NCBI RefSeq assembly: GCF_006345805.1
Contig: NC_043004.1
Span: forward strand, 682,001-746,000
Source of the DNA: Octopus sinensis
Taxonomy: Eukaryota
Reading direction: 5' to 3'
Length of the DNA: 64,000 nucleotides
Shown: one piece after another, positions 3,164-63,720 of the stretch
Layout of the letters: every line of letters starts with the position of its first letter
How positions within the stretch are numbered: position 1 is the stretch's first letter
Position numbers and translations under genes: made by a program
The notes under the pieces: model-generated
Seen by the model: only the letters and a program-made list of their open reading frames with translations
The model's database searches: none
Told to the model about the DNA's origin: nothing

Positions 3164-3165
3164 TT

Positions 3166-3261
<96 letters not shown>

Positions 3262-22786: not shown

Positions 22787-23455
22787 TATTATTATTATTA
22801 TTATTATATATAATAGCAAAAGAAAAAAATCCTATATGCTGAACAATAGACTTTAGATCGGCCAACCACGTACAATATTAATCGTGTTCCTCGTTGATGA
22901 AGGAAGAATCCTTTCGGATTAATCCAGAAAACGGTCCGATTCAGGGATAACGGAATTAAAAAAAATTCTGTTAGCTTGTTTTCCGCATTTCAACACGCTG
23001 TGTATTTATAGTGAAAAATATTGCATGTGGTTAGACGATCTAAAATCTATTTTACAGCATATTGGCATAGACATTTTTTTTCCTTTTATCCTTGTTTATA
23101 ATTGTTTATAATTTTCCCCTTAAAGGGTATTTTAATATGCTGGCCACTGATAAGATATTTTTGAAACATTTTATCCTTATATTAGAAGTGTACACACACG
23201 CACGTGCGCGCGCATACACACACATTGTCAAATACAATTTGTATTTGACAAGTTCTAGAGAGGAACGAAAGCGCTAATAATAAATGAAGAAATAAAAGGA
23301 TTTTTTTCCAAAATCCTGACGACTTTTTTCTCAATATTCAATTCTGTACATCACACCTAACGTTATATATATATATATATATAGGCGCATGAGTGGCAGT
23401 GTGGATTTGGTAGACGAAAACTGAAAGAACCCATCGTATATATATATATATATAT

Positions 23456-23676
23456 TCAGATGAATATGGTACTTAAGTTAAAGGTACCAGAATTTAGTAT
23501 GGTATTATCCATATATTTAAAAAATGGGGTGATTATAATCAAAATAAGCAACAAGGATATCCAGGGGTAATGCAGTACGATCGTTTCATGCGACTCCATT
23601 TAATTGAAAACATTACATTCAATTAAATGGAGTCGCATGAACGATCGTACTGCATTACCCTTGGATATCCTTGTTG

Positions 23677-23681
<5 letters not shown>
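23456..23681 (-). mobile_element. (TA)n-flanked fold-back element: about 63-bp inverted arms plus about 90-nt one-sided extension
   Basis: Arms 23545-23608 and 23618-23680 differ by 1 mismatch and 1 indel; 9-nt loop; minus strand has GAAA-CGAUCG-UA (hammerhead 3' half). Confidence 0.75.
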
Positions 23682-23751
<70 letters not shown>

Positions 23752-31463: not shown

Positions 31464-31510
<47 letters not shown>

Positions 31511-31559
31511 CAGTGCCATCTCCTCCATCCCCACCATCAAAACCACCACCACCACCACC

Positions 31560-31591
<32 letters not shown>

Positions 31592-34618: not shown

Positions 34619-34684
<66 letters not shown>

Positions 34685-34743
34685 CATAAACTGAATAAAC
34701 AGAGTCAATAGGAAGGAGTACGTTTAGATAGCTATTTAATAAA

Positions 34744-34844
34744 CACTACACACGTTTCGATACAACATAGATCCACATATACACAGGATTTAAATTAATA
34801 AACGGTTTACCTGTATAATGGGACCAGTTGTATCTCCTCAGGTG
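34744..34844 (-). ncRNA. Type I minimal hammerhead ribozyme motif, canonical core, extended stem II
   Basis: CAC-CUGAGGA-GAUACAAC...GUUGUAUC-GAAA-CGUGUG-UA-GUG: stem I 3 bp, stem II 8 bp, GUA triplet. Confidence 0.7.
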
Positions 34845-34899
34845 ACATATAATGTGTTAGCTTCAAAGTCAAAGATTTACTTACGGGGACAACGATTAC

Positions 34900-35002
34900 A
34901 TCCTGAGGAGATGCAACTGGATGCCGTTATACAGGTAAACCGTTGCTTAATTCAAATCCTGTGTATATGTGGATCTATGTTAGTATCGAAACTTGTGTAG
35001 TG
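34900..35002 (+). ncRNA. Second, inverted hammerhead copy with damaged stem I
   Basis: AUC-CUGAGGA-GAUGC...GUAUC-GAAA-CUUGUG-UA-GUG. Confidence 0.55.
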
Positions 35003-35268
35003 TTTAAATAGCTGTCTCAACGTACTTCTTCCTGTTGACTCTATTTATTCGATGTTTATTTTTCACACACGATGAATGCCTAAGCCTAGACTTCGAACAC
35101 TACCGGTTATTTAGTAATTCTAAGGGTGAACGAACTCTATTTTGTACTCTAGTACGCTCCTAACAGAATACACTTTAAATATATATATCAAAATGTAACC
35201 ACATGTGGATCGTTGGAGATCTTTTCCCTCCCGTTTTCCTTTTCTCTTGGACTTTCTTCCGTCTCCTG

Positions 35269-35301
35269 TTTCTGACGAAGAGCTTTGCTCGAAATGTAAA
35301 A
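35269..35301 (+). ncRNA. Minimal hammerhead-like motif with an extra A after A9, in a Penelope-like pLTR remnant (about 35200-35400)
   Basis: UUU-CUGACGA-A-GAGC-UUU-GCUC-GAAA-UG-UA-AAA. Confidence 0.6.
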
Positions 35302-35411
35302 CTACTTTACTTTCCTTCCCTGAGCGACTGCTAATACTTTGCATGTGCCACGTCCTCGCGTTGTTATTTTTTCCCTTGTGTTTGCTCTTCGTTTTGTTTG
35401 AAGATTTACTA

Positions 35412-35541
<130 letters not shown>

Positions 35542-39161: not shown

Positions 39162-39204
39162 TATATATATAATATATATATATATGTATTATATATAAAT
39201 GTAA

Positions 39205-39836
39205 TAAAATACATCTAATATAGGATAAAATTTTTCGAAAAAATTTCTATTAATGGCCAGCATATAAAAAATACCTTTAAAGGTTAAACTTATAAACAAC
39301 TAATAAACAAGGGCAAAAGAAAAATTCTAATGCAAAATGTGCCGAAATTAGACAAATCGTCAATAACCATATAATTTATCACTATAAGAACGCGTCTCGA
39401 AGTAAGCCGACATAAATTTCTAAAAAATTCCATTATTATCGTATCGGTCCCAATTTCAGAGTTAATTCATAAGAATTTCCTCCTTCATAAGAATTTTGCC
39501 CTTGTTTATAAGTTCTTTATAAGTTTAACCTTTAGAGGTATTTTTTAATATACTGGTCATTGATACAATTTTTTAAGAAAAATTTTATCCTATATTAGAT
39601 GTAAATTTAACAGTGTTCACTTCCGGACTCTCTCACTCTATGAGAGGTGTGCAGGAGAATTTCTATTTTGGATATATTTGGGGTACTTAATTGTGCTCAT
39701 GACTTAGTGTTTGCTTCTTTCAAGGGTATAAGTAAGTATTTCATTTATTTCTTACCGCATTTATCGCTGACGAGGAGAAAATTCTTATGAATTAACTCAG
39801 AAATTGGGACCGATACGATAATAACGGAATTTTTTT
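39205..39836. mobile_element. (TA)n-flanked element with interleaved inverted repeats A-B-A'-B'
   Basis: A about 39210-39328 and A' about 39494-39603; B about 39423-39480 and B' about 39778-39836. Confidence 0.75.
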
Positions 39837-39839
39837 ACA

Positions 39840-40600
39840 GTAAACAGTCTGCTCAATACCACAGATTTGCTTGTCAGTTGTTTGACCTTAACCAGTTGAG
39901 CATGTCTCTTAGTGGCTGACTATAAGTGCATCACTGATCACGAGCAGAAGTAGTGGGGAGGCATCATAGTCATATGTTGAGAGGAATTCTTTAGGATTTG
40001 ACTAATTCCCCTTTGGAAACATTGGTGTTTCGTTTATCATCCTTAAACAAACCTTATTCAAGGACCTTTTGAGCAGGATGGGCTACTTAACCCCTTACCC
40101 GGCAGAAACGAATATATGCGTTTTGACCGAAATCGCTTTTTTCTATCTCTGGCGAGTTAACTCGTCAAAAGATAGACTCGCCAAAATCGACAGCAAATGA
40201 GTTCCTTCGTCTAAAAACGGGTTAACTTGTTTCTGCCCAAAGCGGTAATTTAAAATCAATATTATTGAATTAAAATTCATAATAAATAAGGTTTGAAATA
40301 TACCTCGAAATCACCATTCAAAACATAGTAAAATAAAACAATTAAAAAATATGTCTGAAAAAATACATTTATTTTCAAAATAATTGTTGGGTAAGGGGTT
40401 AACCTGAAGAAAATTCTAACTGGGTCTCCACCTGTGAATCATGCGCTGTTTACCTTGATATAAGATCACTTTGTCGCGCACATATGGTTGTGATATAAGT
40501 GCCTGGTGTACCCTTATCAGACGTAGTCATGATGGGTATATTGGGCTTCGTATATTTGTACCCTAGTGCCACTTTGATGGTATGCGCTGCTCTCTCACTC

Positions 40601-49624: not shown

Positions 49625-50060
49625 AACTTAACTTAGAAAGGTTTTGGCCAGTATTGGCCCAGGTCATGTCTAACTTAATAGCACCACCTGGCGAAGTCTT
49701 TCAATCAGGATTTGGGAACCAAGGCCCATTCGAGCAGAGAGTTATTGTTTGCGGAGATATATCCGAGTGTGGGTGGTTTGTCCGGGACTGTTTGAAGGAA
49801 TTTGTCCAAAGTCTTCTTGAATTCTGTGTGGTCAGTTTCTGTTTTGACGTGTCCTGGTGTAATGTTGAAGAGAGCGGGTCCAATTGAGGTGAAATAATTG
49901 AGCCGTATTGTTGTTATGAGATGCGATTTAGATTTTTGTTGTGGACGGATAGAACGTGGTCCAAGCCTTGGATGTATTTTGAAGGTGATGCCAACATCAT
50001 TTGGACAGTGCTGATGGAATATTTTCCACATCATACAGATAATGTTGCGTTCACGGCGTC
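49625..50060 (-). pseudogene. CR1/L2-group LINE 3' end (ORF2 C-terminus plus short 3'UTR and (TTAAG)n-like tail)
   Basis: MWKIFHQHCPNDVG..RLGPR..FTSIGPALFNITP..FKKTLDKFLQTVPDKP..GY..NNSLLEW; reverse-complement end CTTTCTAAGTTAAGTTA. Confidence 0.75.
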
Positions 50061-50133
50061 GTTGGAGTGAATACAGTTTCAGCTTTTGGAGTGAATACAG
50101 TTTCAGCTTTTCTAGTCGACCCCAGTAGTCGAG

Positions 50134-50166
<33 letters not shown>

Positions 50167-50171
<5 letters not shown>

Positions 50172-50510
50172 AGGTTTGGAGATGATGTACAGGTATTATA
50201 TATTAGGAGAAATGAGGTAATCAGAAGATCGGATGGTTTATATTTACAGATATTTATTTATATATTACATTTTTTACATATATATCATATCAAATTGATA
50301 CACTCTTTGCAAACATTAGCGCAAACATTATTTTCAAATCAAAATAAGTTCCTTCGGAACTTATTTTGATTTGAAAACCCCACTAGAATGGGAGAAAGCG
50401 CTATGTTTTGCAAAGAGTGTATCAATTTGATATGATATATATGTAAAAAATGTAATATATAAATAAATATCTGTAAATAAAACCATCCGATCTTCTGATT
50501 ACCTCATTTC

Positions 50511-50520
<10 letters not shown>
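50167..50520 (-). mobile_element. (TA)n-flanked fold-back element with 3-nt loop and about 32-nt one-sided tail
   Basis: Arms about 50200-50352 and 50356-50520 centred on TTC (50353-50355); left arm has a deletion of about 20 nt; extension at 50167-50199 on one side only. Confidence 0.85.
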
Positions 50521-50593
<73 letters not shown>

Positions 50594-50680
50594 ATATACA
50601 TATATATACACACATACATATATATACATACATATATACACATACATATATATATATATATCCATGCACACACACGCACG

Positions 50681-50720
<40 letters not shown>

Positions 50721-51011
50721 TAATTAGAGATGAAACCACTATTAGGCAAGTCAACAGTGAAAAAACATAAGCCAATACATAAAAATTAATTTAAAATATA
50801 AAAGTTAAAATAAAAATTATTTAAATAATTTAAACTTATAAATTTATATATATATATACAATATATATATATATATAATGTATGTATGTATATTTTTATA
50901 TTTATATATTATTTATTAATTAATTATTAATCAATTAATTATTAATTTATTATTTTTTTTTAAATATTAAAAGTATTAAAAGTTTAATAAAAGATAAAGA
51001 GTATATATAAC

Positions 51012-51519
51012 AAAGTTAAGTTGTAAGATACTGCACGAGTGGAAATATATATGAAAGAAGGTTTGAAAATGTAATTTTAAAGCTGTTTATTCACTTGACC
51101 GGTTTCACATTTTTAGAAAAAGATTGTCAAGAGTAAAATGTAAAGCTTTATATAAGCTTTGTTGTGTTAAGGACTGGTTGTCACAAAAATATTACAATAC
51201 ATATATACACTCTTTGATGATAATACTGTGTATGTATATATATACTACCAAACAAACATGATTTGTATTGAGCTCCTAATACATTTTGTTGAATATTTTC
51301 TTAAATGCCTTCATTGTAAACTGTTTTTAACATTTTTTATTATTATTATTATTATCAAAGAATGTATATATGTATTTTATAACTTTTGTGACAACCAGTC
51401 CTTAACACAACAAAACTTATACAAAGCTTTACATTTTACTTTTGACAATCTTTTTCTAAAAAAGTGAAATCAGTCAAATGAATAAACATCTTTAAAATTG
51501 CATTTTCAAACCTTCTTTC
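51012..51519 (-). mobile_element. Fold-back Penelope-like derivative: about 175-bp inverted arms, about 40-nt one-sided tail, TA-flanked
   Basis: Arms start at 51053 (GAAAGAAGGTTTGAAAATG) and end at 51519; tail 51012-51052 matches the reverse complement of 62337-62375. Confidence 0.85.
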
Positions 51520-51532
51520 ATATATATATATA

Positions 51533-51915
51533 AGCGCAGGTGAAGCTGTGTGGTAAGAAGCTTGCTTCTCAACCACTTGGTTTTGGGTTCAGTCCCACTG
51601 CGTGGCACCTTGGGCAAGTGTCTTCTTCTATAGTCTCAGGTCCACCACAGCCTTGTGAGTGGATTTGGTAGACGGAAACCGAAATGAAGCCCATTATATA
51701 TATGTATATGCTTAAGTGTGTGTGTCTGTGTCTGTCTCCCCATCATCGCTTGACAACTGATGTTGGTGTGTTTACACCCCGTAACCCTGGCGGTGAGGCA
51801 AAAGAGACCGATAGAATAAATACTAGTCTTACAAAGAATAAGTCCTGGGGTCGATTTGTTCGATTAAAGGCCGTGCCCAGCATGGCTGCAGTCAAATAAC
51901 TCAAACAGTAAAAAA
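51533..51915 (+). mobile_element. SINE family A, full length
   Basis: GCGCAGGTGAAGCTGTGTGGTAAGAAGCTTGC...CCCAGCATGGCTGCAGTCAAATAACTCAAACAGTAAAA. Confidence 0.9.
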
Positions 51916-51945
51916 TATAATATATATATATAATGTACATTATAT

Positions 51946-52007
<62 letters not shown>

Positions 52008-52024
52008 TATATACATATAATGTA

Positions 52025-52278
52025 CGGACCGGGCTGCGTGTTTGTGTTCTTGAGCAAGGCACTTTATTTCACGTTGCTCCAGTTCACTCAGCTGTAGAAA
52101 TGAGTTGCGACGTCACTGGTGCCAAGCTGTATCGACCTTTGTCTTTCCTTGGATAACACTGGTGGCGTGGAGAGGGAGGCTGGTATGCATGGGCGACTGC
52201 TGGTCTTCCATAAACAACCTTGCCCGGACTTGTGTCTAGGAGGGTAACTTTCTAGGTGCAATCCTGGTCATTCGACCG
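52025..52278 (+). mobile_element. SINE related to family C, with a different 3' tail and no head
   Basis: GGACCGGG..GTGTTCTTGAGCAAGGCACTTTATTTCACGTTGCTCCAGTTCACTCAGCTG shared with family C; distinct 3' half ending TTTACCCTTTA. Confidence 0.75.
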
Positions 52279-52376
52279 AAGGGGTCTTTACCCTTTACAT
52301 TATGTGTATAAATGCACACACATGCACACATATACACATGTACACGTACATACATATACATATATATATATATATA

Positions 52377-52430
<54 letters not shown>

Positions 52431-52570
52431 AAGAGAAAAAGAGAGAGAGAGAGAGAGCAAGTAAACAAAACTGTTTCTGACACATAATGTTGATACAAGA
52501 TACGAAGGGCTGACTAATTTTATACCTATTAGGTTTTATATATATTATATATATATATATAATATATATA

Positions 52571-52605
<35 letters not shown>

Positions 52606-53719
52606 ACGCATATATGTGCAGACATTGTATTTATTCTAGTGCAGAACCAGTGATTCGCGACAACTTACTGCTTGAAGGAAAAGAAAAAAAGAAAAAAAAA
52701 GTGGCCGCCATGCTTTATTTCTTACTTTTTAAAATATATAAATGCATTAATGAAATTATCTCTTACGTCACTCCTCTTCATATTTATCGTGTGAGGGAAA
52801 TATTTGCCGCGATGCTCCAAAGCTTGAGCTGAACTAATCTAATCTATTTCTGCTGCTTGACAGGAGTCTGGCTTAAATGGATGCTCGTCGGTGGACAATA
52901 AATATAGAGTTTTGTCGGGGGGGGGGAGATCTGTCAGAATACTTGAAGCAACAACCATTGAAATATTATAACTAAAAATATATCGCCGACAAATGTTCAC
53001 AGAAGAGTAACTAATCTTTTCGAAAGTGAGAATTATTGAGCTTGGTCTACTGTAAATGTTGGTTTTTTGAATCTAGGAACACTTTAGGCAACAAAAAAGT
53101 TGTTTTTGGTTTTTAACTCACCTCCGCTCTAATCGACCAGACATGAATATTATCAAAGATGTTCTAACTATGACTGTCCCTCTATATTTATCTGGGTCTA
53201 CATTATCTAATGGATCATTTATTTAGATATAGTTGGGTTTGATTTAATGAGATTTAGCTTCTATTTCTATTGGGGGAAAGATTACATAGAGCTTCTTTCT
53301 TTGGCTCTGTCAGCAAAGAAGTAAAATTCAAAGGAGAAACAAATGATGTACATTGGTGTGTAGCCACGATATGTGTAATCACAAAACTGTCTACTCTTAT
53401 CACGTTGATATGTCGCCATTTTCAGACCCTTTTATACTCAACTCTCATGTGATTCAAATTCTTATTAATCTCCCAGAAATATAGAAATATGATTCTGTGA
53501 CTTCGAGTCACAGAAGATTCAGTTATATGTTACTAGTAAGAATTTTTTTTAATGCTTAGAAGTAAATCATAGCATATCAGTCGTCTTGGAAGAATCTTGG
53601 ACGTGGAATGACATTGTTTTCTGAGAAACAAAGTGACTGAAGAAATATTTGTTTCTAACTTCAGCACAAATCCACAAATTTGTAGCGAGGGGTTCTTCGG
53701 ATTAATCGACTACTCAGGT

Positions 53720-54130
53720 CTGTTATAAGCCCTAGGACTCTTAAGGTCGGAGTTTCATCCGGTTTTCATGGAGTATTAGTGACTGAAATTATAACACTTT
53801 TATCCTGGTTCGTCGCAGAGTTAACTTCCCAGCTATTCCTGGAACTTATTTACAGACTTGAGAGAAAGAAAATGAAGTGTTTTGCTCAAGAACACAGCAC
53901 ACCTCCCGATTGGGAAATCGAAACCAAGATTTTATCATCGTGAGTACAACACCCATACCACTAGGCCATGCAACTTTTCTTGTACTTACTGAAGCTTATT
54001 TCATCGACCTCGGAAGGATAATAGGCAAAGTGAACTTTGGTGGGATTTGAATTCTGAACATTAAGAGCCGAAACTAAATACCGAAAACCATTTGTACGAC
54101 GCTCTAGCGATTCCGTGCATCTACCGTCTT
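53720..54130 (-). mobile_element. Degraded SINE C (53720-53975) followed by SINE B (53990-54130)
   Basis: GAAGTGTTTTGCTCAAGAACACA..GAAATCGAAACC; ATCGACCTCGGAAGGAT..GGCAAAGTGAACTTTGG. Confidence 0.65.
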
Positions 54131-54149
54131 TAGGTCAAGAAACTTTAAG

Positions 54150-54385
54150 AATAGATGGTGATGCTTGGCCACATGCTTCGGTGCCAGCCTGAAAGCTGCG
54201 TAATGCGTGATGCAATAGAATGGACAGTGCAAGATACCAGAAGAGGAAAACCTAAGATTACTTGGTCGAAAACAATGAGGAGTGAAAGAAGAGATAATGT
54301 CTGGGCAGAGGCAGGAACAGAAGACAATACGGAGGAGAATACGCAGAGACCCTCTGGTACCAAGTTATGTTGGAGGGACAATCAG
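54150..54385 (+). pseudogene. RTE-clade LINE ORF C-terminal fragment
   Basis: LGHMLRCQPESCVMRDAIEWTVQDTRRGKPKITWSKTM matches the RTE W(L/F)GHVxR...RxRGRPKxTW motif. Confidence 0.6.
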
Positions 54386-55159
54386 TAACAATAACAAATT
54401 GCAGAAAATGTCTTAATTCATAACTAAAGCGTTTGTAAAATTTAGAAGGCTTTCTTTATCATATTCGAGTTTTAGTCATAGTTTTGGTTGCCGAATTTTA
54501 TGATGTTAATAAGTTCCATACTTTAAAGAAATATGTAGCATCGTATTTAAGCCATCAACGAAGTATTTAAGTAGTATCTAAGGAATCAAGGAAGCTAGTG
54601 TTATCTCAGTCTTCTCATTTCCCACTTATATTGAATCACTTGTCTTTTACTTATTCTCAGTGCAAAGGTTCCAATATTTAGTGAAGTGTTTTGACGCTAA
54701 AATATGAAAGCTGTAAGTGATTGAATAAAATACGTAGCAATGAGAAAAATGACTGCAGTAAGCTGGTAGGTATATATTTGAATGAAGATGAGATTATATT
54801 AAATAATAAAAAAACGAAATACACTGCCTGAATGGAGGTAATGTAAAGCTATATTAGTTATCTTTCCTTTTCATTTCGTCTCGATGCCTCAAATTATAGA
54901 GAAATTATAAGAACGGAGAAGAAGTCTTCTGGGCCACATCACAAGCAATATATAATTGAATCATGTATTTTCATTATGAATTAATTTTTCACTTTCATGA
55001 AGGAGTGGAGGAATTGTATTGAGGAAAATAAAATTTTCTCAGGGGTGTAAGAGGAACGTGAAGTGAAATGCTTTGATTAAAACTTGAAGCGACAACGCTT
55101 ACTTGGCACACGGAAAGCTGACATCTCGTTGTGCAGCATTTGCCATTATCGTGCTTTAT

Positions 55160-55560
55160 ACATTTGTCTTTTAATTGTCTCAGTCACTGGAGTGCGGCCA
55201 TGATGGAGCACCGCCTTGAAATGTTTAGTCGAACAAATTGACTCCGGAACTTTTTAATTAAAATTGGTACTTATTCAATCTGTAATTTTTTTTGCCGATC
55301 CGCTAATGTTTCGGGGACGTAAACAAGCCAACACCGGTCGTCAAACGATGAGAGAGAACAAACACAAAGACACACACAACAAACAGATACACGCTCACAT
55401 ATGAAAGGCTTCCATACAGTTTCCATCAACCAAATTCCCTCACAAGGTATTCATTGGCCCGGAGTTATGGTGAAGACTAAGGTTCCGCACAGTAAGACTG
55501 AACCCGAATCCGCATAGTTGCAAAACGATCTCCTTCACCACACGGCCACGCTTGCGCTTA
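55160..55560 (-). mobile_element. SINE family A (diverged)
   Basis: GTGCGGCCATGATGGAGCACCGCC...CCGCTAATG..GGGGACGTAAAC...ACTGAACCCG. Confidence 0.75.
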
Positions 55561-55659
55561 TTTATAGGAGTTTTTTTTCTTCTTCACAAAGTATGCTTGG
55601 CTCTACATCGCATCTCTGTTAAGTTGCTGGACTAAATATCTCATAGCCTTACTGATCAA

Positions 55660-56250
55660 AATGCTTAGCGGTATTTTGTCTGCCGTCACGTTCTGAGTTT
55701 AAATTCCGCCCAGGTCGACTTCGCCTTTCATCCTTTCGGGGTCGATTAAATAAGTACCAGGGGTCGATATAATCGACTTAATCCGTTTGTCTGTCCTTGT
55801 TTGTACTCTTTGTGTTTAGCCCCTTGTGGGTAGTAAAGAAATAGAAATAGGTATTTCGTTGGACTTTTCATTCTGAGTTCAAATTCTGCCGAGGTTGACT
55901 TCGCCTGTCATCATTTCGAGGTCGATGAAATAAGTATCAGTTGCGTACTGGTGTCGATGCCATCGATTTACTTCCTCTCCCGAAATTGCTGGCCTTGTGC
56001 CAAAATTTGTAACCGATATTTAGTACTAATATGGCGGCGAGCAGGCAGAATCGCAACTGCGCCGGAAAAATTGCTTAGCGGCATTTCTTCTGATATTACG
56101 TTCTGAGTTTAACTGCCGCTGGGACTATCTTTGCTTTTCATTATTTGGGGTCGATAAAATAAGTACCAGTTAAGCACTGGGGTAGATGTAATTGACTTAT
56201 CCTCTCCCACAAACTTGCTGATCTTATGCCAAAATTTATAACTAATATTT
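55660..56250 (+). mobile_element. SINE family B tandem dimer (55660-55995) plus a further copy (56033-56250)
   Basis: Junction GTAAAGAAATAG-AAATAG-GTATTTCG at about 55835-55860, as in the 7.2-7.8 kb trimer. Confidence 0.85.
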
Positions 56251-56699
56251 GGTTATAGTCTCTAGTTTTAAGTAAGCCTCAAGCGAAGTCTTTTGTAAAA
56301 TATTAGCAGCAAAAAATGCTAGTATTTTTTATTCAGAAAATTCAAGATTTTGTAGATCTGAAAGAAATCAATAATATATACTAACTCTGAAAGTGAAATA
56401 TTTTCTTTTAGAATAGACAGAACAGTGTATCGTAAGTTTTATTTTTTTTAAAACTAGAATCATTGTTTAATAAACAATACAACAGAAGATTTAGCTGAAG
56501 AAATTAAAAGAAGATTTAGTTGAAGAAATATTGCTTAGATGACGGAGATGGAATCTAAGTAACTATCTTCTAGATTCCTTAGTTTCCATTTCATTCTTTC
56601 GTATTTTTAGGATGTTTTCATTCCTCTTAGAGCGATAAACTAGATGCCAGATTCATATGGAGGAGATGCAATGCGCTAATCCTTTATCCTAATTCCGTA

Positions 56700-57048
56700 T
56701 TTTATCTTTTATCCTTCACTTGTTTCAGTCATTTGACTGTGGCCATGCTGGGGCACTGCCTTCAAGATATTTTTTCGATTGAATCGACTCCAGGACTGTT
56801 TATTTTTTTTTAAAGTCTGGTACTCTGGTACCTATTCTATCCGTCTCTTTTGCCGAACCGCTAAGTTACGGTGACGTAAACACGCCAGCACCGGTTGTCA
56901 AGTGGTGGTAGGGAGAAACACACAGAAACGCGCGCACACACATATACATACACACACACAACCCACAAGTTTCTTTCAGTTTCCACCTACCAAATCCCCT
57001 CACAAGGCCTTGGTCAGTTCGAGGCTAGAGTAGAAGACACTTGTCCTT
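56700..57048 (-). mobile_element. SINE family A lacking the head
   Basis: Family tail and body blocks. Confidence 0.85.
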
Positions 57049-58354
57049 CCAATGATTACAGTGTAGAAATGAGGTAGAGGTCGAATTTCTTTTCTATCAA
57101 TGAAAGACATTTGCATCACTAAATCCCATTTTCTCTCCACAAAAAAAAAAACAGAACAAAAATACACAAGGCTTTTGTCTATCCTGGAATCAAGTGATAG
57201 AGATTATAACATATTTCCGGCGAACCTATCCTATCATTCCTTATCGATTCTGACATGTAAGCAATTCACGCGCCTTGAACAAGGCATTAACTCACTCAGT
57301 CTCGAATATTCTCGTCTACAAACCCCTGTTATTGTTGTTGTTGCTGCTGTTTGGTGTGAGTAAGCTGGTTTTAGAGGAGAAAGAGCAACGTCCATGAACT
57401 TTTGCCGAGCAATCCAAATTCCGGTGGGTTGGAGGAGGGAAAGCGAATGCTTTACTCACGGATTAAAGTTATAGAAATAGGGAGCAACGCACATCAAGAT
57501 ATCGAGATAGGCACAAACTGGAGACTGGTCTGAATTCTTAGCAGCAAATTCTGGTCTACTAAAAGCCCCTAAGGTTCAGTGAATGGTGTTAAATCGAACA
57601 ATGCATTAAATCAGCCATTCGAAAACATGATTGTATCGCAGTATAGGAAACAGAATTATTTCTGTGATTAGAAAAAGAAACAATAACAATAAAAAAAACC
57701 CAAAGAAAACAAAAACAAAAAACAAAGCAAAATCAACCATTTCTTCTCGTTTACCATTTTGTTTCCGTGGTGCAAATATTTGGTGTTGATTATATTCTTG
57801 TAGGTTTGGCACATATACCAAGCCTGAATATCTGCTTTCTGCTTGGAAGCTTTTAGTCATAATCAATATTACTGCAAACCTATTCGTCCGTTCAATGCTA
57901 TAGATTTCTCAAAATATCCAAGATAATCAAATATGCCATCAGTCCTATGATATCATAAAGTCGAGTCCCAAAAATATTTCGTTTTGTAAACTATTCATAT
58001 TCGTTATAAGGTTTCTTCTACATGTTATAAATGCAACGAACACCTATATTGCTTGGAAGACATACATTTAAACAAATTCCCTCGCTTTTTCCATCCTATA
58101 TTTATCAATATCTTTATCTATGTCTTCTTATTCACTAACTTTGCATTATTTTTCCTTATCTTTGAAAAGTTTCAAAATTCATTCCTAATACATGGCAGTT
58201 TCTTTCGTCACTAATGGAAGCGGGGAAAAATACGTCTTCACTGTTTTATTATCAGAATCTGAAGGTAACGAAGTTATTCATGCAGCCAGAAAAATTTATA
58301 TTTCTCAATATCTGTTCCACTGCATAAAATGAGTCCATTATCAAGTGACATTTT

Positions 58355-58417
58355 CATATGTATATATGCATACATACATACATACATACATACATACATA
58401 CATACATACATACACAC

Positions 58418-58494
<77 letters not shown>

Positions 58495-58500
58495 TGTATG

Positions 58501-58555
<55 letters not shown>

Positions 58556-58694
58556 GTATATATATATAAATATATATATTATATACATGTATATATATAT
58601 GTATATATATATATATGTATGTATATACATACATATGTATATAAATATATATATATATATTTATATGTTTGTATTATGTATGTATATATGTATA

Positions 58695-58725
<31 letters not shown>

Positions 58726-58887
58726 CTCATATAATGCATGCGCACATACATACAAAACATTGTTTTGACACCTTAGATATTAATTAAATGGCATACACAC
58801 GCGCGCACACAAGCACACCTGTATATGTATATGGCAGTTTGTGCATCTGCGTGTTTGAGTGTGTATGTGCAAATTGTAAGTATGTAC

Positions 58888-58918
<31 letters not shown>

Positions 58919-58928
58919 TGTATGTATG

Positions 58929-59005
<77 letters not shown>
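58355..59005. repeat. Compound (ATAC)n/(AT)n/(GTAT)n microsatellites
   Basis: Direct reading. Confidence 0.9.
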
Positions 59006-59006
<1 letters not shown>

Positions 59007-59219
59007 TGAAATAAACAACAGAGATGCTTTGCTCCACGCAGAAACTTGCAGAAGCTACTCAGAAGTCTTGCAAGCCCTTTGAAATCCTTTGTAATTCTGG
59101 AAACCCTTCCATATCGTCAGCTGGTGTCTCAGGGCTAGAAGTGTTTTGCACTTTAGCTTGAACGCTTCGCCTGAATGGGGCAGCAAGGACTGAACTAATC
59201 TTCATCTACAGAAGAGTTC

Positions 59220-59335
59220 TACTTGCGGTCTCTTATCAGTCCCAGCCATCTTGATCTAGTTTCAGTTGCCGTGCCTATCTCCTTGATGGCTTTCTTCAGT
59301 TGTCTGGGTTCCAGATCTATCTTCTGTCGGATATA
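59220..59335 (-). pseudogene. Possible RTE-type LINE extreme C-terminus
   Basis: YIRQKIDLEPRQLKKAIKEIG..RSRWLGLIRDRK* resembles the RTE YIDxLxxD..ELxxAMxDRxxWR motif. Confidence 0.4.
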
Positions 59336-60587
59336 TACAATCAGATATATAATAATCGATTAAGGAAATAGAAAATGGTTTCGGTATTAGTCTTTATTGT
59401 GTGCGACAATTGTTTCGGCCGATCCTGCGATTGTTCCTTATGGGTGGGATTTTATGCATCGTATTGTGTTGCATCAATTTTGAGGTTTGGGTCACACAAG
59501 GTACATTCATACATAAAGTTGTGTCTCGCTAAAAATTTTGAGTTCAAGCGGTCATGTTGTTATTTGCTCGCTTCAGTTAGGAAATGAAGCATTGCCACAA
59601 TTGTCCTTATCATTCACACATTACCGTGTGCGAATAATATCCTTAAGGTCAACATTTACTCACTCATGACCACTTCTAGGGTTTATCACTAACTCAGTTT
59701 TTAACCAAATAAGTTGATGTTTACATTTTTTCAGCGACACAATTTGAAAATTGCTTTGGCAAAAAAAAAGTTTCAGTAAAATATGTGAGGTCAAAAACGG
59801 GAGAGTAACGTTTGAAATCGACTTTCAGTTCAAATATATTTTTTTAAAATAGAGCTATATTTTATTCTGGCTTATATGATAGATCTCAACGACAGGAATC
59901 TATCCATGTTACTTATATGCAAAAATATTCAGCAGAAAAAAGTAATGGGATAAAAAACCGTCGAAAAAAGGGAGATTGACGTCGGAAATCTACTTTGACT
60001 CCATATATTACGCTTCTTTCAAAAGAAAATTACAAATTTAACTTTGCTCATAAATCTCGACTACAGGAATACCATGATGTTAATTATATATAAAAAATTA
60101 AAATAAAGAACTGCTGGGGCCAAATGTGCCGAAAACAGTGGTAACACCTAAAATCTAATTCAGAAACTAAACATTTTGTTTTTGTTTTGCTCATTTGATA
60201 GAATACATCCAGACGAGTGTCGTGATGCTAATCTTTTCAAAGAAGATTCAAAATGAAAAAACTTATTATATAAGCTAAATGAGCCACAAGGATGTAAAAC
60301 AATTTTCAAGTAATATTATTACTTTTCCATTGTAATATTAAATATTGATAACTAATAATAGTAAATAATTATGCATATAAACTTATAAACTGTAGACAAG
60401 AAAGAAAGAAAAAATAAAAATATAAAGATATGCAGGCTAGAGTATATGGGGGAGATATATAGATAGGATGAGACCTGTTAAGGAAAGATTAGATTGCATG
60501 AATGTTTAAAGCAAGGGAAGAATACTACACTTGCTAACACGGGTTAGGATGCGTATAGGCCCTTACACACACATTCGCACACAAGCA

Positions 60588-60653
<66 letters not shown>

Positions 60654-60659
<6 letters not shown>

Positions 60660-61416
60660 AAAAAAGGTTTGAAAATGCAATTTAAACGATGTTTATTTAC
60701 TTAATCGGTTTCACTCTTGGTAAAAGATTGTCAAAAGTTACATTTAAGGAAACATTGAATAATATGGGTTCAAAAAAGTTTTTTACATAATTGTCACATT
60801 GAATATTATGCATTCAAAAAAGTTTTTACATAATTGTCCATTGGATATTATGAATTCAAAAATGTTTTTTTATACATAATTGTCACATTACATGTATAAA
60901 TATAGTGTTTGGTAACAGAGAAGTTCAATAGTGTGATGAGAATATTTGGGAAAATTTGGCAGAAAAGGATAAAACAAATATATTATTGGGAATTGGTTGC
61001 GTTAATTATTGGTTGTCGCAAATTGTCACATTACATGTATATATATACAATCTTCGGTATATATATACAGCCTTTTGACAGCAAAAATTAAAATGGATTT
61101 TTTATACATCTCAGAATATTTTAAGTACAAGGCGAGAATATGTTTTTACTGACCTGTTGGTATTAGCAGAAAGGCTGATCTGAGAGAACAGAGGAAGTAA
61201 CCAATGTGGTGTATACTTCCCCTTTATGCATGAATGATTTTGGGGTTATCAGGAGGTTAGTATGCGGGTGTGAATAGATGTGTCCGTGCCCGCTGGTCAG
61301 ATAGCGTCTGTTTGTCACACACATATATACACACACATGCTGTATGTGTGTATTGTATGTGTGTATATATATGCTAGGTGTATTTGTGTGATATTTATAT
61401 TATGTATGTATGTGTG

Positions 61417-61449
<33 letters not shown>

Positions 61450-62370
61450 GTGTGTGTATGTGTGTTATATATCTGTGTATGTTATATATAGATACATATT
61501 ATATTTGTGTGCTGTGTGTATATGTGATATATGTGGGTGCGTTGTGTGTGGGTGTGTGTGTTCTGTGTGTGTGTGTGTGTTGTTTGTATGTGGTGTGTGT
61601 TTGTTTACTATGTGTGTGTGTGTGTGTGTTGTTGTTGTTGTTGTGTGTGTGTGTGTGTGTGTATATATGTGTGTGACAAACAGACGCTATCTGACCAGCG
61701 GGCACGGACACATCTATTCACACCCGCATACTAACCTCCTGATAACCCCAAAATCATTCATGCATAAAGGGGAAGTATACACCACATTGGCTACTTCCTC
61801 TGTTCTCTCAGATCAGCCTTTCTGCTAATACCAACAGGTCAGTAAAAACATATTCTCGCCTTGTACTTAAAATATTCTGAGATGTATAAAAAATCCATTT
61901 TAATTTTTGCTGTCAAAAGGCTGTATATATATACCGAAGATTGTATATATATACATGTAATGTGACAATTTGCGACAACCAATAATTAACGCAACCAATT
62001 CCCAATAATATATTTGTTTTATCCTTTTCTGCCAAATTTTCCCAAATATTCTCATCACACTATTGAACTTCTCTGTTACCAAACACTATATTTATACATG
62101 TAATGTGACAATTATGTATAAAAAAACATTTTTGAATTCATAATATCCAATGGACAATTATGTAAAAACTTTTTTGAATGCATAATATTCAATGTGACAA
62201 TTATGTAAAAAACTTTTTTTGAACCCATATTATTCAATGTTTCCTTAAATGTAACTTTTGACAATCTTTTACCAAAGAGTGAAACCGGTTAAGTAAATAA
62301 ACATCGTTTAAATTGCATTTTCAAACCTTTTTTCTTATATAATCCCACTCGTGCGATACCCCACAACTCA

Positions 62371-62375
<5 letters not shown>
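60654..62375 (+). mobile_element. 1.7-kb palindromic Penelope-like derivative: about 680-bp near-identical inverted arms, about 330-bp simple-repeat spacer, 39-nt one-sided tail, (TA)n on both sides
   Basis: About 60654-61331 versus 61662-62340; I found 2 substitutions and 2 homopolymer indels; mirrored ORFs 60909-61091(+) and 61900-62082(-) are identical; termini homologous to the 51-kb element. Confidence 0.92.
62254..62294 (+). ncRNA. Hammerhead-like motif, U3:A8 core variant (paralogues at 60699-60738 minus, 51093-51134 minus, 51438-51479 plus)
   Basis: ACUU-UUGACAA-UCUUUUACCAAAGAGU-GAAA-CCGG-UU-AAGU; 4-bp stem I; palindromic stem III ACCGGU. Confidence 0.6.
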
Positions 62376-62416
<41 letters not shown>

Positions 62417-62599
62417 GAGCGGAGTAAATGATTTGACCGCAAAATACCGAAAGCACAAGTTGCCCTGGGTTAGACATATCGCAAGGTTCATAGACAACAG
62501 GTGGACCCGCACAGGTGCCGAAGAGTGTTCAAAAGATTGAAAAAAGGCTCCTTGGAAGACCTCCACAACGACGGGAAGACATTTTAGTTAAGTAATTTG

Positions 62600-63720
62600 G
62601 GTCAAGCTGGGAAAGAATGGTGCAATCAAGACAAGATTGGAAGAGAATTGTGATCAGTGGTGTATAACAACATCTGATGGTCTGTTCGGTACTGTGCATC
62701 AAGTATTAGGTTGATGCTTCTTGTTCCTGGACTGCAAATGTGCACCTTTCGAAGTGATAGACGCCTTTGATTAACAGCGTTTCTGTCATCCCGGAGCTTT
62801 CTGCTTGCATATCCATACATGGTCTTCTGCCGATACGCATTCATCTTTTCATATGTTGCGTTAGAATCGAGCAACTTCTTTGGGAATGCATTGAAGGTTA
62901 TCAGACAGGGAATGTTTCTCGAGGTGCTGCTTTCCATGTCCCATGATGTTATCTGCTTTGTGTATGCAAACTTGGTCAAAGGATGCACTTCGATACTTGG
63001 TGGGTAGAAGATGTTGTCGAAAGGATATCATGTGACAACCAAAAGCTGCTTTTGGTTGTCACATCACATCCCTTAAACCGCTGCTTTCTTATTTTCGTTT
63101 TAGGTAGAGGTGGTCTATTTCAATATTGATGTGAAAATTACTTGTGCTGGTCAATATCTTCTGGGTCTTCACACCAATGGTTCGAATCTCATCAAGCATT
63201 CAGTCAAGCAGCTCAAATGTTGGTGTAAGTACTGGTACTGCAAGCACATTTTGGGCCACTGTTTTATTGAATGCAGAGAGTTCCGAGGTTCATCTTTTTC
63301 GTATCCAGTTGTTATATTCTTTTGTGATGTTTCCTGTTAGAGGTACCATCGCAAGATATGTTTTCATGCCCTTATGCGCCAGTAACACTCCTCATCAAAT
63401 AGAGTAGAAACAGTTAAGCCGATGGTGGAGATGCTGCTAGTCTGGTTTGTAGTTTTCATAACTATAAAGCAACATTTATTCAATCCTGTATATTTTGAGA
63501 ATCTTGTAAGCTGGTTAAGAATTTTTTCATCTCATACCTACTCCTGATATACAGTTTCAAGTCATCCACATAAGAACAGAGTTTAATTTTTGCTATTTCT
63601 GTCTCCTTGTGAGCCAATGAGATACTCAACATAAATGACAAGGGGTTTACTAGCATTCCACAGAGGTTGGACCCCTTGGAATATATCTCTACGATAGTGT
63701 GTTTTATCAGTGACAATATT
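62600..63720 (-). pseudogene. Degraded R4/Dong-like RLE-class retrotransposon RT region (separate family)
   Basis: LCSYVDDLKLY (YVDD at 63561-63572); KEYNNWIRKR*TSELSAFNKTVAQNVLAVPVLTPTF..DEIRTIGVKTQKILT..FHINIEIDHLYLKRK*ESSGL; RQKTMYG; LILDAQ. Confidence 0.8.

What the first reader, a model, noticed from the sequence alone, without database searches (positions are those of the whole stretch)
50167..62375. Family of microsatellite-anchored fold-back elements with a one-sided tail and hammerhead motifs (candidate non-autonomous Penelope-like retro-palindromes)
Seen: independent elements at 50167-50520, 51012-51519 and 60654-62375 share one architecture: two inverted arms, an extension of about 30-40 nt beyond one arm only, and (TA)n at the ends. 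The 51.0 and 62.3 kb elements share homologous termini and tails (AAAGTT.AGTTGT...GCACGAGTGG) yet differ in length (0.5 versus 1.7 kb). Every arm contains a hammerhead-like core, intact or decayed. The 23.5 and 34.7 kb elements follow a similar plan. Established: Penelope-like elements carry minimal hammerheads in their pLTRs, often have an inverted 5' pLTR and a short 3' tail. Inference: these look like TIR MITEs but are probably ORF-less retroelements, possibly ribozyme-processed, that insert into simple repeats.
Basis: partly seen in the sequence, partly recalled or inferred. Interest (0 to 1): 0.88.

Follow-up and report, generated by a model that had tools for sequence, protein, structure and literature searches.

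The report
Octopus hairpin repeats lodged in TA-microsatellites
This stretch of an octopus genome carries short non-coding mobile repeats that sit inside (TA)n microsatellites as head-to-head inverted double copies, with an extra piece on one side only; the layout is real and recurs in other octopus genomes, but the proposed hammerhead ribozymes are not there and the link to Penelope-like retroelements could not be tested.

Summary
The window is Octopus DNA. E1 (50168-50515), E2 (51012-51519) and E3 (60658-62375) are strong fold-backs, and every outer edge abuts a (TA)n run. Each has an extension beyond one arm only. The E2 and E3 tails and about 100 nt of their termini are homologous.

In 178 kb fetched from O. 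vulgaris, O. sinensis and O. bimaculoides I found the same plan in five more elements. I also found relatives of E1 and of the 23.5 kb and 39 kb elements. In all four families that have a second copy, the tail is part of the repeat. Two families also occur as single, non-palindromic units that carry the tail. Six of seven dimers whose tail is shared with a second copy have exactly one tail.

The hammerhead claim fails. No Rfam hammerhead family matched at E ≤ 10 in any element, and there is no CUGANGA…GAAA core in E1-E3.

No RT, GIY-YIG, transposase or Rep partner was found, so membership of any family is untested.

Best reading (about 0.4): short non-coding units are copied into (TA)n as inverted dimers by copy-back synthesis, as Penelope-like/Naiad insertions are. 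The main rivals are TA-targeting fold-back MITEs, Helentron-type elements, and break repair at fragile (TA)n.

The parts
50137..50167 (.). (TA)15 run abutting the outer tip of the E1 tail
   Evidence: Read directly; listed among the TA tracts.
50168..50196 (-). E1 tail: the terminal 29 nt of the E1 unit (TTGGAAGGTTTGGAGATGATGTACAGGTA), present on the left copy only
   Evidence: Conserved in the O. sinensis monomer L009 18755-18782 (alignment A2; blast). Its tip, GAAGGTTTGGAGATG, matches the E2/E3 arm tip with 2 mismatches; the motif has 5 matches in the window against 0.25 expected.
50197..50352 (-). E1 left copy of the unit. It begins with a TA-rich patch (TTATATAT) next to the tail.
50353..50356 (.). 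E1 palindrome centre (TTCG). The unit's inner end, GGAACTTA, starts on either side of it.
   Evidence: Fold. The L009 monomer starts at the same GGAACTTA.
50357..50515 (+). E1 right copy, without tail; it ends directly in the (TA)n run 50516-50598
51012..51044 (-). E2 tail (AAAGTTAAGTTGTAAGATACTGCACGAGTGGAA)
   Evidence: Homologous to the E3 tail. No hairpin: dG -0.1 kcal/mol, z = +0.9.
51045..51052 (.). TA patch (ATATATAT) between the E2 tail and arm. The tail-less arm ends in the equivalent TA run.
   Evidence: Alignment A1.
51053..51225 (-). E2 tail-side arm. The outer ~100 nt are homologous to the E3 arm termini.
51226..51346 (.). E2 loop
51347..51519 (+). E2 tail-less arm, followed by (AT)6 at 51520-51532 and then the 5' end of an octopus SINE
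60591..60657 (.). (TA)33 run abutting the E3 tail-less arm
60658..61337 (-). E3 tail-less arm. It contains three ~40-nt tandem repeats and the repeated ATTGTCAC motif.
61338..61653 (.). E3 loop: TG-rich imperfect microsatellite, the same polarity throughout
61654..62335 (+). E3 tail-side arm
   Evidence: 686 nt, 99.4% identical to the left arm.
62336..62375 (+). E3 TA patch (TATATAAT) plus the 32-nt tail CCCACTCGTGCGATACCCCACAACTCAACTTT, followed by the (AT)19 run 62376-62413
23456..23678 (-). 23.5 kb element: tail of about 90 nt (23456-23545), then a fold-back with 63-nt arms and a 10-nt loop; (TA)n on both sides
   Evidence: Tail and arm are homologous to O. vulgaris L006 1442-1576, which has the same plan but 135-nt arms (alignment A3).
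34688..35060 (.). 34.7 kb fold-back flanked by direct (CA)n; no tail, no relative found
39195..39840 (.). Rearranged member of a further family: tail and arm at 39215-39480, an inverted tail copy at 39490-39610, then centre and partial arm at 39656-39835
   Evidence: alignments A4 and A5.
22845..23175 (-). Single (non-palindromic) copy of the 39 kb family. It carries the tail terminus and is preceded by TA.

Best explanation
E1, E2/E3 and their relatives are short, non-coding, non-autonomous mobile units with a defined polarity. Each unit runs: variable inner (5') end, body, an AT/TA-rich patch, and a family-specific terminal 'tail'.

The units integrate into (TA)n microsatellites, often as head-to-head inverted dimers. 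I infer that the dimer is made during integration by copy-back synthesis:
1. One copy is primed from the (TA)n target at the true end of the template, so it keeps the tail.
2. The new strand then turns back at the inner end and copies itself outward.
3. It is joined to the other (TA)n end at the first TA-rich patch, so the second arm lacks the tail.

The closest documented process is target-primed reverse transcription by Penelope-like elements. Their insertions carry an inverted 5'-truncated copy and a tail at one end, and their Naiad clade targets (TA)n and has no hammerhead.

Shown here: the architecture, the conservation of the tail, the monomers, and the TA anchoring.
Inferred: the RNA intermediate, the copy-back step, and the enzyme.

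No ribozyme is involved.
For: 1. 18 of 18 outer edges of nine one-tailed fold-backs abut a TA run. The sample has 225 such runs in 241 kb.
2. The abundant octopus SINE is not anchored in this way: 1 of 20 3' ends and 2 of 6 5' ends lie near a TA run.
3. The tail is part of the repeat in all four families that have a second copy: E2/E3 (A1), E1/L009 (A2), 23.5 kb/L006a (A3), and the 39 kb family (A4/A5).
4. Single units carrying the tail exist. L009 18593-18782 starts exactly at E1's palindrome centre. Window 22845-23175 is a second case.
5. The outer end is fixed while the inner end varies within a family: arms of 63 versus 135 nt, and about 230 versus 686 nt.
6. Six of seven dimers whose tail is shared with a second copy have exactly one tail, one has two and none has zero. 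By my own hand calculation this is about 12 times likelier under built-in asymmetry than under random loss from symmetric elements.
7. The tail tip and the tail-less arm tip share no TIR above the cross-family control: score 6.0 versus 5.06 +/- 1.47.
8. In most elements the tail-less arm ends where the tailed arm has a TA-rich patch: TTATATAT, ATATATAT, TATATAAT, TTTATATAAT, ATTATAAA.
9. L007 16031-16250 has inverted (TATG)n/(CATA)n flanks. This is what copy-back running into the target would give; insertion of a ready-made palindrome would not.
10. Published Penelope-like features match.
11. Penelope-like elements are recently active in O. vulgaris: 30 families, 329 insertions (PMC13282606).
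Against: - No RT, GIY-YIG or any other partner shares these ends in the 241 kb examined.
- No pLTR-like direct tandem was seen.
- There are no hammerheads, although canonical Penelope-like elements have them. The HHR-less Naiads are said to be long inactive in cephalopods, whereas E3 (99.4%) and L007 16383-17857 (100% over 113 nt) look young. Gene conversion between arms could also explain that identity.
- Tails of 47-130 nt exceed the 30-40 nt described for Penelope-like elements.
- The L009 monomer has no TA run at its inner flank.
- The 39 kb family is preceded by TA even outside microsatellites, and one copy has two tails. That fits a Tc1/mariner-type TA duplication.
- E2, E3 and the E2/E3-like tip in E1's tail all lie within 12 kb, and none was found in 178 kb elsewhere. 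That pattern suggests local hopping, which is more typical of DNA transposons.
- The sample is small: nine elements and seven families.
Confidence: 0.4

Rival explanations
1. The elements are cut-and-paste fold-back MITEs of a TA-targeting DNA transposon (Tc1/mariner-like or an unclassified TIR family). They insert preferentially into flexible (TA)n DNA. The one-sided tail would be a terminal segment lost from the other end by slippage between the flanking (TA)n and an internal TA patch. Arms would shorten symmetrically by processing of the palindrome centre.
For: - Long inverted arms, no coding capacity, a size of 0.2-1.7 kb and TA on both sides.
- Repeated subterminal motif ATTGTCAC/ATTGTCAA in the E3 and E2 arms. 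ATTGTCAC has 9 matches in the window, 6 of them in E3.
- E2/E3 and the E1 tail share only a 15-nt tip next to the TA run, GAAGGTTTGRARATG, as MITE families sharing a transposase site would.
- The 39 kb family termini are preceded by TA even outside microsatellites, and one copy has both tails.
- L007 16383-17857 has perfect 113-nt terminal inverted repeats around 1.2 kb of non-palindromic DNA.
- Tc1-mariner (73 families, 1553 insertions), unclassified TIR and MITE families are the most recently active DNA elements in O. vulgaris.
- E2, E3 and the E2/E3-like tip in E1's tail cluster within 12 kb.
- From my own knowledge: Sleeping Beauty-type transposases favour ATATATAT targets, and mariner MITEs such as MADE1 are near-complete palindromes.
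Against: - Six of seven dimers have exactly one tail and none has zero.
- The tails are conserved parts of the repeat, yet the two extreme ends share no TIR.
- No terminal nucleotides are common to the seven families, and there is no CAGT/YYAGGT-type start.
- Monomers start exactly at the palindrome centre.
- One palindrome has inverted (TATG)n/(CATA)n flanks.
- No transposase was found in the sample.
Confidence: 0.25
2. The elements are Helentron-associated non-autonomous elements (HINE / DINE-1-like rolling-circle elements). These are built asymmetrically: a subterminal inverted repeat 2-4 nt from the 5' end and 38-60 nt from the 3' end, with a 3' extension that carries a short hairpin.
For: - The published plan is inverted repeats plus a 38-60 nt extension at one end only, with frequent microsatellites or tandem repeats inside. 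Such elements are reported from molluscs (PMC4067079).
- Helitrons expanded in Octopus and are still active there.
- The E2/E3 tails end in CTTT.
- The L006b tail has a 6-bp hairpin (CTTGCTATGCAAG core) ending 11 nt from its tip.
Against: - HINE subTIRs are 12-15 nt. Here the arms are 60-690 nt and fill the whole element.
- The targets are TA runs, not TT or T-rich sites.
- T strings at the boundaries are inconsistent in strand.
- The tails do not fold better than shuffles (z = +0.9 to -2.0), and the E1 and E2 tails have no hairpin.
- The inner ends vary, and monomers exist.
- No Rep/helicase was found in the sample.
Confidence: 0.1
3. The fold-backs are products of break repair rather than transposition. 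Long (TA)n tracts extrude cruciforms and break. Repair by snap-back, templated DNA synthesis (polymerase-theta-like) would fill the break with an inverted duplication of a captured sequence and join it through TA microhomology.
For: - Strict association with (TA)n.
- TA-rich patches at the arm/tail boundary.
- Near-perfect hairpins with loops of 4-10 nt (E1 and the 23.5 kb element).
- Inverted (TATG)n/(CATA)n flanks at L007 16031-16250.
- Families are small or single-copy in 241 kb.
Against: - The same units recur at unrelated loci and in different species, with the same tail and the same ends. This needs a dispersing template.
- Arms of up to 686 nt and a 1.2 kb interior are far longer than typical templated insertions.
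Confidence: 0.1
4. One reading: ORF-less Penelope-like 'retro-palindromes' whose arms carry minimal hammerhead ribozymes that process the transcript.
For: The architecture matches published Penelope-like insertion structures. A CTGACGA...GAAA string is conserved in the separate 39 kb family, at window 39767-39803 and L006 about 2828-2865.
Against: - No hammerhead family matched at E <= 10 in any of the elements, and none at gathering score in 199 kb.
- There are zero CTGANGA cores in E1, E2 and E3, and no core plus helix II even with one mismatch.
- The 39 kb family string was not scored as a hammerhead either.
Confidence: 0.03
5. The palindromes are assembly artefacts, such as chimeric fold-back reads.
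For: The E3 arms are perfect over 566 nt and surround a microsatellite loop.
Against: - Unique DNA lies on both sides of each element.
- The arms of E1 and E2 have diverged (80-92% identity).
- The same plan occurs in two independent public assemblies, O. vulgaris GCA_951406725.2 and O. sinensis GCA_006345805.1.
Confidence: 0.02

Closest known systems
Penelope-like elements, especially the Naiad clade (Craig et al. 2021, PMC8557442; Arkhipova et al. 2013, PMC3846280)
   Same: Both have an inverted 5'-truncated copy joined head-to-head. Both have a short extension present at one end only and conserved within a family. Both prefer (TA)n, which hides any target-site duplication. Naiads lack hammerheads. 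Non-autonomous derivatives that share only the 3' end are known (Chlamys MRC1), as are unrelated sequences captured between inverted pLTRs.
   Different: No RT/GIY-YIG partner was found and no direct-tandem pLTR was seen. Tails here are 29-130 nt rather than 30-40 nt. The whole element is often a hairpin with a tiny loop. Cephalopod Naiads are reported as ancient remnants, while some copies here look young.
Palindromic Tc1/mariner MITEs (MADE1-type) and long-TIR fold-back transposons (Drosophila FB, Galileo, Tetris)
   Same: Both are non-coding fold-backs with TA on both flanks. Both have subterminal short repeats in the arms, variable arm length and hairpin-forming transcripts.
   Different: The elements here have an obligatory one-sided, conserved tail and no shared TIR at the two extreme ends. 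Monomer forms exist. No transposase partner was found.
Helentron-associated interspersed elements (HINE / DINE-1 / mini-me; Thomas et al. 2014, PMC4067079)
   Same: Both have built-in end asymmetry, with inverted repeats plus a one-sided extension of tens of nucleotides. Both are associated with microsatellites, and HINEs occur in molluscs.
   Different: HINE subTIRs are 12-15 nt, the target is TT, and a 3' hairpin is required. Here the arms are 60-690 nt, the target is (TA)n, and the tails show no significant hairpin.
Human palindromic AT-rich repeats (PATRRs)
   Same: Both are AT-rich near-perfect palindromes of a few hundred bp at unstable AT-rich sites, and both can form cruciforms. This comparison rests on my own knowledge.
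   Different: PATRRs are locus-specific and are not dispersed families with conserved ends.

Membership tests
Penelope-like elements (non-autonomous derivative) | Shares its 3' end or pLTR with an element encoding a PLE-type RT plus GIY-YIG endonuclease | tested here: inconclusive
   No GIY..YIG motif in the six-frame translation of 241 kb and no PLE-like ORF. The only Pfam match is RVT_1, for a LINE at 41 kb. The sample is far too small to exclude a partner, and no eukaryote-wide DNA search was available.
Penelope-like elements (non-autonomous derivative) | Inverted 5'-truncated copy adjacent head-to-head, with outer ends fixed and inner ends variable | tested here: met
   Monomer and dimer share the outer end. 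Arms are 63 versus 135 nt in one family and about 230 versus 686 nt in another.
Penelope-like elements (non-autonomous derivative) | Short tail (30-40 bp) at one end only, conserved within the family | tested here: met
   E1 has 29 nt and E2/E3 have 32-34 nt, on one side only and conserved. Other families have 47-130 nt, longer than described.
Penelope-like elements (non-autonomous derivative) | pLTRs formed by partial direct tandems | tested here: not met
   No head-to-tail partial tandem of a unit occurs in any of the nine elements.
Penelope-like elements, canonical clades (Penelope/Poseidon, Neptune, Nematis) | Hammerhead ribozyme motif in the pLTR | tested here: not met
   Rfam at gathering score and at E <= 10, plus a custom descriptor.
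Naiad clade of PLEs | Insertion bias for (TA)n and no canonical hammerhead | tested here: met
   18 of 18 edges lie in TA runs, and no HHR was found. However, Naiads are reported as inactive remnants in cephalopods.
Tc1/mariner-type MITE | Terminal inverted repeats at both extreme ends, matching a DDE transposase element | tested here: not met
   Similarity between the tail tip and the opposite arm tip equals the cross-family control. No transposase was found in the sample. If the tail is excluded, the arms themselves are TIRs, but then the conservation of the tail is unexplained.
Tc1/mariner-type MITE | TA target-site duplication | tested here: inconclusive
   Every element is flanked by TA, but within (TA)n, so a duplication cannot be read. 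The 39 kb family has TA next to its termini outside microsatellites.
Helentron non-autonomous elements (HINE/DINE-1) | 12-15 bp subTIRs, 2-4 nt from the 5' end and 38-60 nt from the 3' end | tested here: not met
   The asymmetry is present, but the inverted repeats are 60-690 nt and span the whole element.
Helentron non-autonomous elements (HINE/DINE-1) | Short palindrome in the 3' extension; insertion at TT with T strings at the boundaries | tested here: not met
   Tails fold no better than shuffles, and the E1 and E2 tails have no hairpin. The flanks are (TA)n.
Retrozymes / hammerhead-bearing circRNA retroelements | Hammerhead ribozymes in the terminal repeats | tested here: not met
   The same searches as listed for the canonical PLE clades.

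The most novel reading that the evidence does not exclude
Octopus genomes may harbour a previously undescribed class of (TA)n-specific, hammerhead-less, non-autonomous retroelements. In this reading they integrate by target-primed synthesis followed by obligatory copy-back, so that each insertion is born as a hairpin with one tailed end. The process would continuously seed the genome with long dsRNA-forming palindromes at microsatellites.
Probability: 0.25. Interest if true: 0.75.

Novelty: new variant of a known kind. Interest (0 to 1): 0.5.

Why it matters
If the copy-back reading is right, these elements give a compact natural record of the poorly understood integration chemistry that produces inverted copies and one-sided tails in Penelope-like elements. 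Dozens of short units, with monomer and dimer forms side by side, would be available for study.

They would also be a steady source of perfect hairpins at fragile (TA)n tracts. That bears on three things: genome instability, the birth of hairpin or micro-RNA precursors, and the supply of double-stranded RNA substrates for the heavy A-to-I editing of cephalopods.

If they turn out to be TA-targeting fold-back MITEs or Helentron derivatives, the finding is an ordinary but so far uncatalogued part of the octopus repeat library. In that case it is useful mainly for annotation.

Tried and rejected
Routes to more genomic copies that led nowhere:
- Exact look-ups of E3 ORFs and of a window hAT ORF found nothing on record.
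- A composite protein made from arm ORFs of four elements gave no hits among 5.8 billion proteins.
- Two metagenome DNA scans, one with the E2/E3 terminus and one with the abundant octopus SINE, found nothing. That collection holds no octopus DNA.
- A LINE RT query returned only distant relatives, up to 62% identity, and a non-octopus locus, L001.

What worked: Octopus hAT/ZBED proteins gave eight chromosomal loci of about 20 kb each.

Ideas rejected:
- The tail as a Helitron-type 3' hairpin: the tails do not fold significantly.
- The tail tip as a second copy of the arm tip, that is, a short true TIR or IR/DR layout: no better than the cross-family control.
- (TA)n anchoring as a general property of octopus retroelements: the main SINE is not anchored.
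- The tail core GCACGAGTGG as a SINE head fragment: 10 of 12 identity only, not significant.
- The CTGACGA...GAAA strings at 35272 and 39767 as hammerheads: no Rfam support.
- Coding remnants in E3 or in L007 16383-17860: all six frames are full of stops.

Full report
**Source and context**

The window is AT-rich eukaryotic DNA (26-44% GC), full of microsatellites and decayed transposons. A hAT/ZBED-like pseudogene at 26826-27803(-) finds its best relatives in Octopus vulgaris, O. sinensis and O. bimaculoides at 74-83% identity. The tRNA-derived SINE at 51533-51916 recurs in every Octopus locus I fetched. The window is therefore from an Octopus genome. (TA)n runs of five or more units number 44 and cover 2.7% of the window.

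The fold-backs are real.
- E1 is self-complementary over 337 nt at 86.6%. It folds as single-stranded DNA at -144 kcal/mol, z = -32.9.
- E2 has 181-nt arms at 92%, and 487 nt at 79.5% overall. Its fold has z = -27.9.
- E3 has 686-nt arms at 99.4%, 566 nt of them perfect, around a 316-nt TG-rich loop.

Each element has an extension beyond one arm only.
- E1: 50168-50196.
- E2: 51012-51044.
- E3: 62344-62375.

The E2 and E3 extensions are homologous. The tail pattern has two matches in the window against none expected. About 100 nt of the adjoining arm termini are homologous too, at about 82%. All six outer edges touch a TA run.

In E2 and E3 a short TA patch separates the arm from the tail, and the tail-less arm ends in that same patch (alignment A1).

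The 34.7 kb element is a fold-back in (CA)n with no tail.

**The hammerhead claim fails**

- At gathering score, Rfam reports only a tRNA in the window and nothing in 135 kb of Octopus loci.
- At E ≤ 10, no hammerhead family appears in 49800-62800, 23440-23690, 34680-35070, 35100-35420, 39200-39860 or L006 2440-3020. The hits there are sub-threshold microRNA-precursor models responding to hairpins and microsatellites.
- The core CTGANGA-N(4-30)-GAAA occurs nine times in the window, but never inside E1, E2 or E3.
- E1-E3 contain no exact CTGANGA at all. A descriptor allowing one mismatch and requiring a helix II of at least 3 bp finds none, against about one expected by chance.

**Getting other copies**

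No eukaryotic DNA database was available, and several indirect routes failed. Octopus hAT proteins returned could be traced to their chromosomes. This gave eight loci, 178 kb in all:
- O. vulgaris GCA_951406725.2: L002, L005, L006, L007.
- O. sinensis GCA_006345805.1: L003, L008, L009.
- O. bimaculoides: L004.

None contains an E2/E3 relative. They do contain relatives of other window elements, and new elements with the same plan.

**What the relatives show**

1. L009 18593-18782 (O. sinensis) is a single, non-palindromic copy of the E1 unit.
   - It starts at GGAACTTAG, exactly the sequence on either side of E1's central TTCG.
   - It runs through the arm to ...CCTCATTTCTTCT, then a TA-rich patch, then TACATCATCTCCAAACCTTCCAA. 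That last stretch is the reverse complement of E1's 'tail'.
   - It is followed by TA-rich microsatellite (alignment A2).
   - E1 is therefore a head-to-head dimer of a unit of about 190 nt. The left copy keeps the terminal tail, and the right copy stops in the TA patch.

2. L006 1442-1883 (O. vulgaris) is a relative of the 23.5 kb element.
   - The order is tail, arm, loop, arm, (TA)n. On the tail side the nearest (TA)n lies about 42 nt beyond the start of the homology.
   - The tail is homologous, but the arms are 135 nt rather than 63 nt.
   - So the position where the tail-less arm ends is the same in the two copies, while the palindrome centre differs.

3. L006 2321-3027 is a relative of the window's 39 kb element. 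It has a 111-nt tail on one side and 296-nt arms at 95%. The window also holds a single copy of this family (22845-23175, minus strand) and a rearranged one (39195-39840).

4. New families with the same plan:
   - L006 1941-2255, with a 61-nt tail.
   - L007 896-1794, with a 47-nt tail.
   - L007 16383-17857, with a 72-nt tail and 113-nt perfect arms around 1.2 kb of non-palindromic DNA.

Over the nine one-tailed elements, 18 of 18 outer edges abut a TA run. The sample has 225 such runs in 241 kb, about one per kb. The main octopus SINE shows no such anchoring: 1 of 20 3' ends and 2 of 6 5' ends. The anchoring is therefore specific to these elements.

**What kind of element is this?**

The tail is a conserved part of the repeat in all four families where this can be tested. 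Of the seven dimers in those families, six have one tail, one has two, and none has zero. If symmetric two-tailed elements lost tails at random, at most half would be one-tailed. By my own hand calculation, the observed split is about twelve times more likely if asymmetry is built in.

The two extreme ends, tail tip and opposite arm tip, are no more alike than tips from unrelated families: local score 6.0 against 5.06 ± 1.47. So the elements as they stand are not ordinary two-ended TIR transposons. No terminal nucleotides are shared among the seven families.

The tails do not fold better than shuffled sequence (z = +0.9 to -2.0), and the E1 and E2 tails have no hairpin. This argues against the 3' stem-loop that Helitron- and Helentron-type elements need (PMC4067079).

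In most elements the tail begins with an AT/TA-only patch: TTATATAT, ATATATAT, TATATAAT, TTTATATAAT, ATTATAAA. The tail-less arm merges into the flanking (TA)n exactly there.

One palindrome, L007 16031-16250, is flanked by (TATG)n on one side and its complement (CATA)n on the other. The microsatellite was therefore copied as part of the arm rather than split by an insertion.

**Most likely mechanism (inferred)**

The unit has polarity: a variable inner end and a fixed outer end carrying the tail.
1. Synthesis is primed from a (TA)n target at the unit's true end.
2. It runs inward, then turns back and copies itself outward.
3. It is joined to the other (TA)n end at the first TA-rich patch.

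This explains the hairpins with small loops, the single tail, the TA patch at the boundary, the monomers (no copy-back), the rare two-tailed copy (copy-back to the end) and the inverted microsatellite flanks (copy-back beyond the end).

The best-documented process with this outcome is integration of Penelope-like elements. [quoted passage not shown] Penelope-like elements are recently active in O. vulgaris, with 30 families and 329 recent insertions (PMC13282606).

**Why I do not file these elements as Penelope-like**

- No RT/GIY-YIG partner, or any other partner, is in the 241 kb.
- No direct-tandem pLTR is seen.
- Canonical clades carry hammerheads, which are absent here.
- The hammerhead-less Naiads are described as ancient remnants in cephalopods. 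Yet E3 and L007 16383-17857 have 99.4-100% identical arms.
- Tails reach about 130 nt.

The cut-and-paste rival keeps real weight.
- Tc1/mariner, unclassified TIR and MITE families are the most active DNA elements in O. vulgaris.
- The 39 kb family is preceded by TA even outside microsatellites.
- E3's arms carry repeated ATTGTCAC motifs.
- E2, E3 and the E2/E3-like tip in E1's tail lie within 12 kb of each other.

Probabilities: I put the copy-back, probably RT-mediated reading at about 0.4. A TA-targeting fold-back MITE is at about 0.25. A Helentron-type element and break repair at fragile (TA)n are at about 0.1 each. The ribozyme model is at about 0.03.

**Verdict**

The hammerhead and ribozyme part is wrong. 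The Penelope-like attribution remains an untested lead.

The finding is of moderate interest: an uncatalogued, asymmetric, microsatellite-anchored hairpin-forming repeat type in octopus. A genome-wide census and empty-site comparison would settle its mechanism quickly.

Noticed in passing
window 50170-50184 versus 51057-51071, 51501-51515, 60663-60677, 62316-62330: The tip of E1's tail (GAAGGTTTGGAGATG) matches the arm tips of E2/E3 (GAAGGTTTGAAAATG). In each case the motif lies 3-8 nt from a TA run. There are 5 matches against 0.25 expected. E1 and E2/E3 are otherwise unrelated, so this may be a shared recognition or priming site.
   Followed up: partly
window 39767-39803 and L006 about 2828-2865 (also L006 2600-2626 on the other arm): A CTGACGA...GAAA string is conserved in the 39 kb family. 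In the O. vulgaris copy it can be drawn by hand with helices I-III, but Rfam scores no hammerhead there at E <= 10, and the window copy breaks helix II.
   Followed up: partly
L007 16031-16250: A 220-nt palindrome flanked by (TATG)n on the left and the complementary (CATA)n on the right, so the microsatellite is part of the inverted duplication.
   Followed up: no
L006 1384-3100: Three unrelated one-tailed fold-backs lie back to back in O. vulgaris, each separated from the next by a long (TA)n run. This suggests repeated insertion into one microsatellite, or growth of the microsatellite around them.
   Followed up: partly
window 51033-51042 and 62345-62354 versus SINE heads at 23387, 33351(-), 51533 and L003 11157: The tail core GCACGAGTGG resembles the first bases of the octopus SINE (GCGCAGGAGTGG, 10 of 12). 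It is not statistically significant.
   Followed up: partly
window 832-1215 and 3162-3542: Two copies in inverted orientation, 98% identical, of the 3' end of a LINE whose ORF ends ...IPVVIGALG... Each is followed by a long (TAA)n/(ATT)n run, so this may be a (TAA)n-associated LINE.
   Followed up: no
window 41072-43051: A decayed LINE reverse transcriptase (Pfam RVT_1, E = 2.7e-07) spread over several frames. Its closest database relatives are up to 62% identical.
   Followed up: partly
window 25700-28700: A hAT/ZBED5-FAM200-like transposase pseudogene with one in-frame stop in 326 codons. It has many annotated paralogues in three Octopus species.
   Followed up: partly
window 31091-31167 (-): tRNA-Ser(AGA) called by ARAGORN and by Rfam (32 bits). 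It lies next to a GC-richer stretch with homopolymeric codon runs at 31260-31780.
   Followed up: no
window 35272-35294: CTGACGAAGAGCTTTGCTCGAAA looks like a hammerhead core with a GAGC/GCTC helix II. It lies outside the 34.7 kb fold-back and has no Rfam support at E <= 10.
   Followed up: yes
window 58350-59010: A large compound (TA)n/(TATG)n/(CATA)n microsatellite block that is self-complementary and draws many sub-threshold microRNA-precursor hits.
   Followed up: no
SINE copies throughout the window and loci: The 3' ends of the SINE are followed by GAGTAAAA-type short repeats (for example gagtaaaagag...) rather than poly(A) or (TA)n.
   Followed up: no
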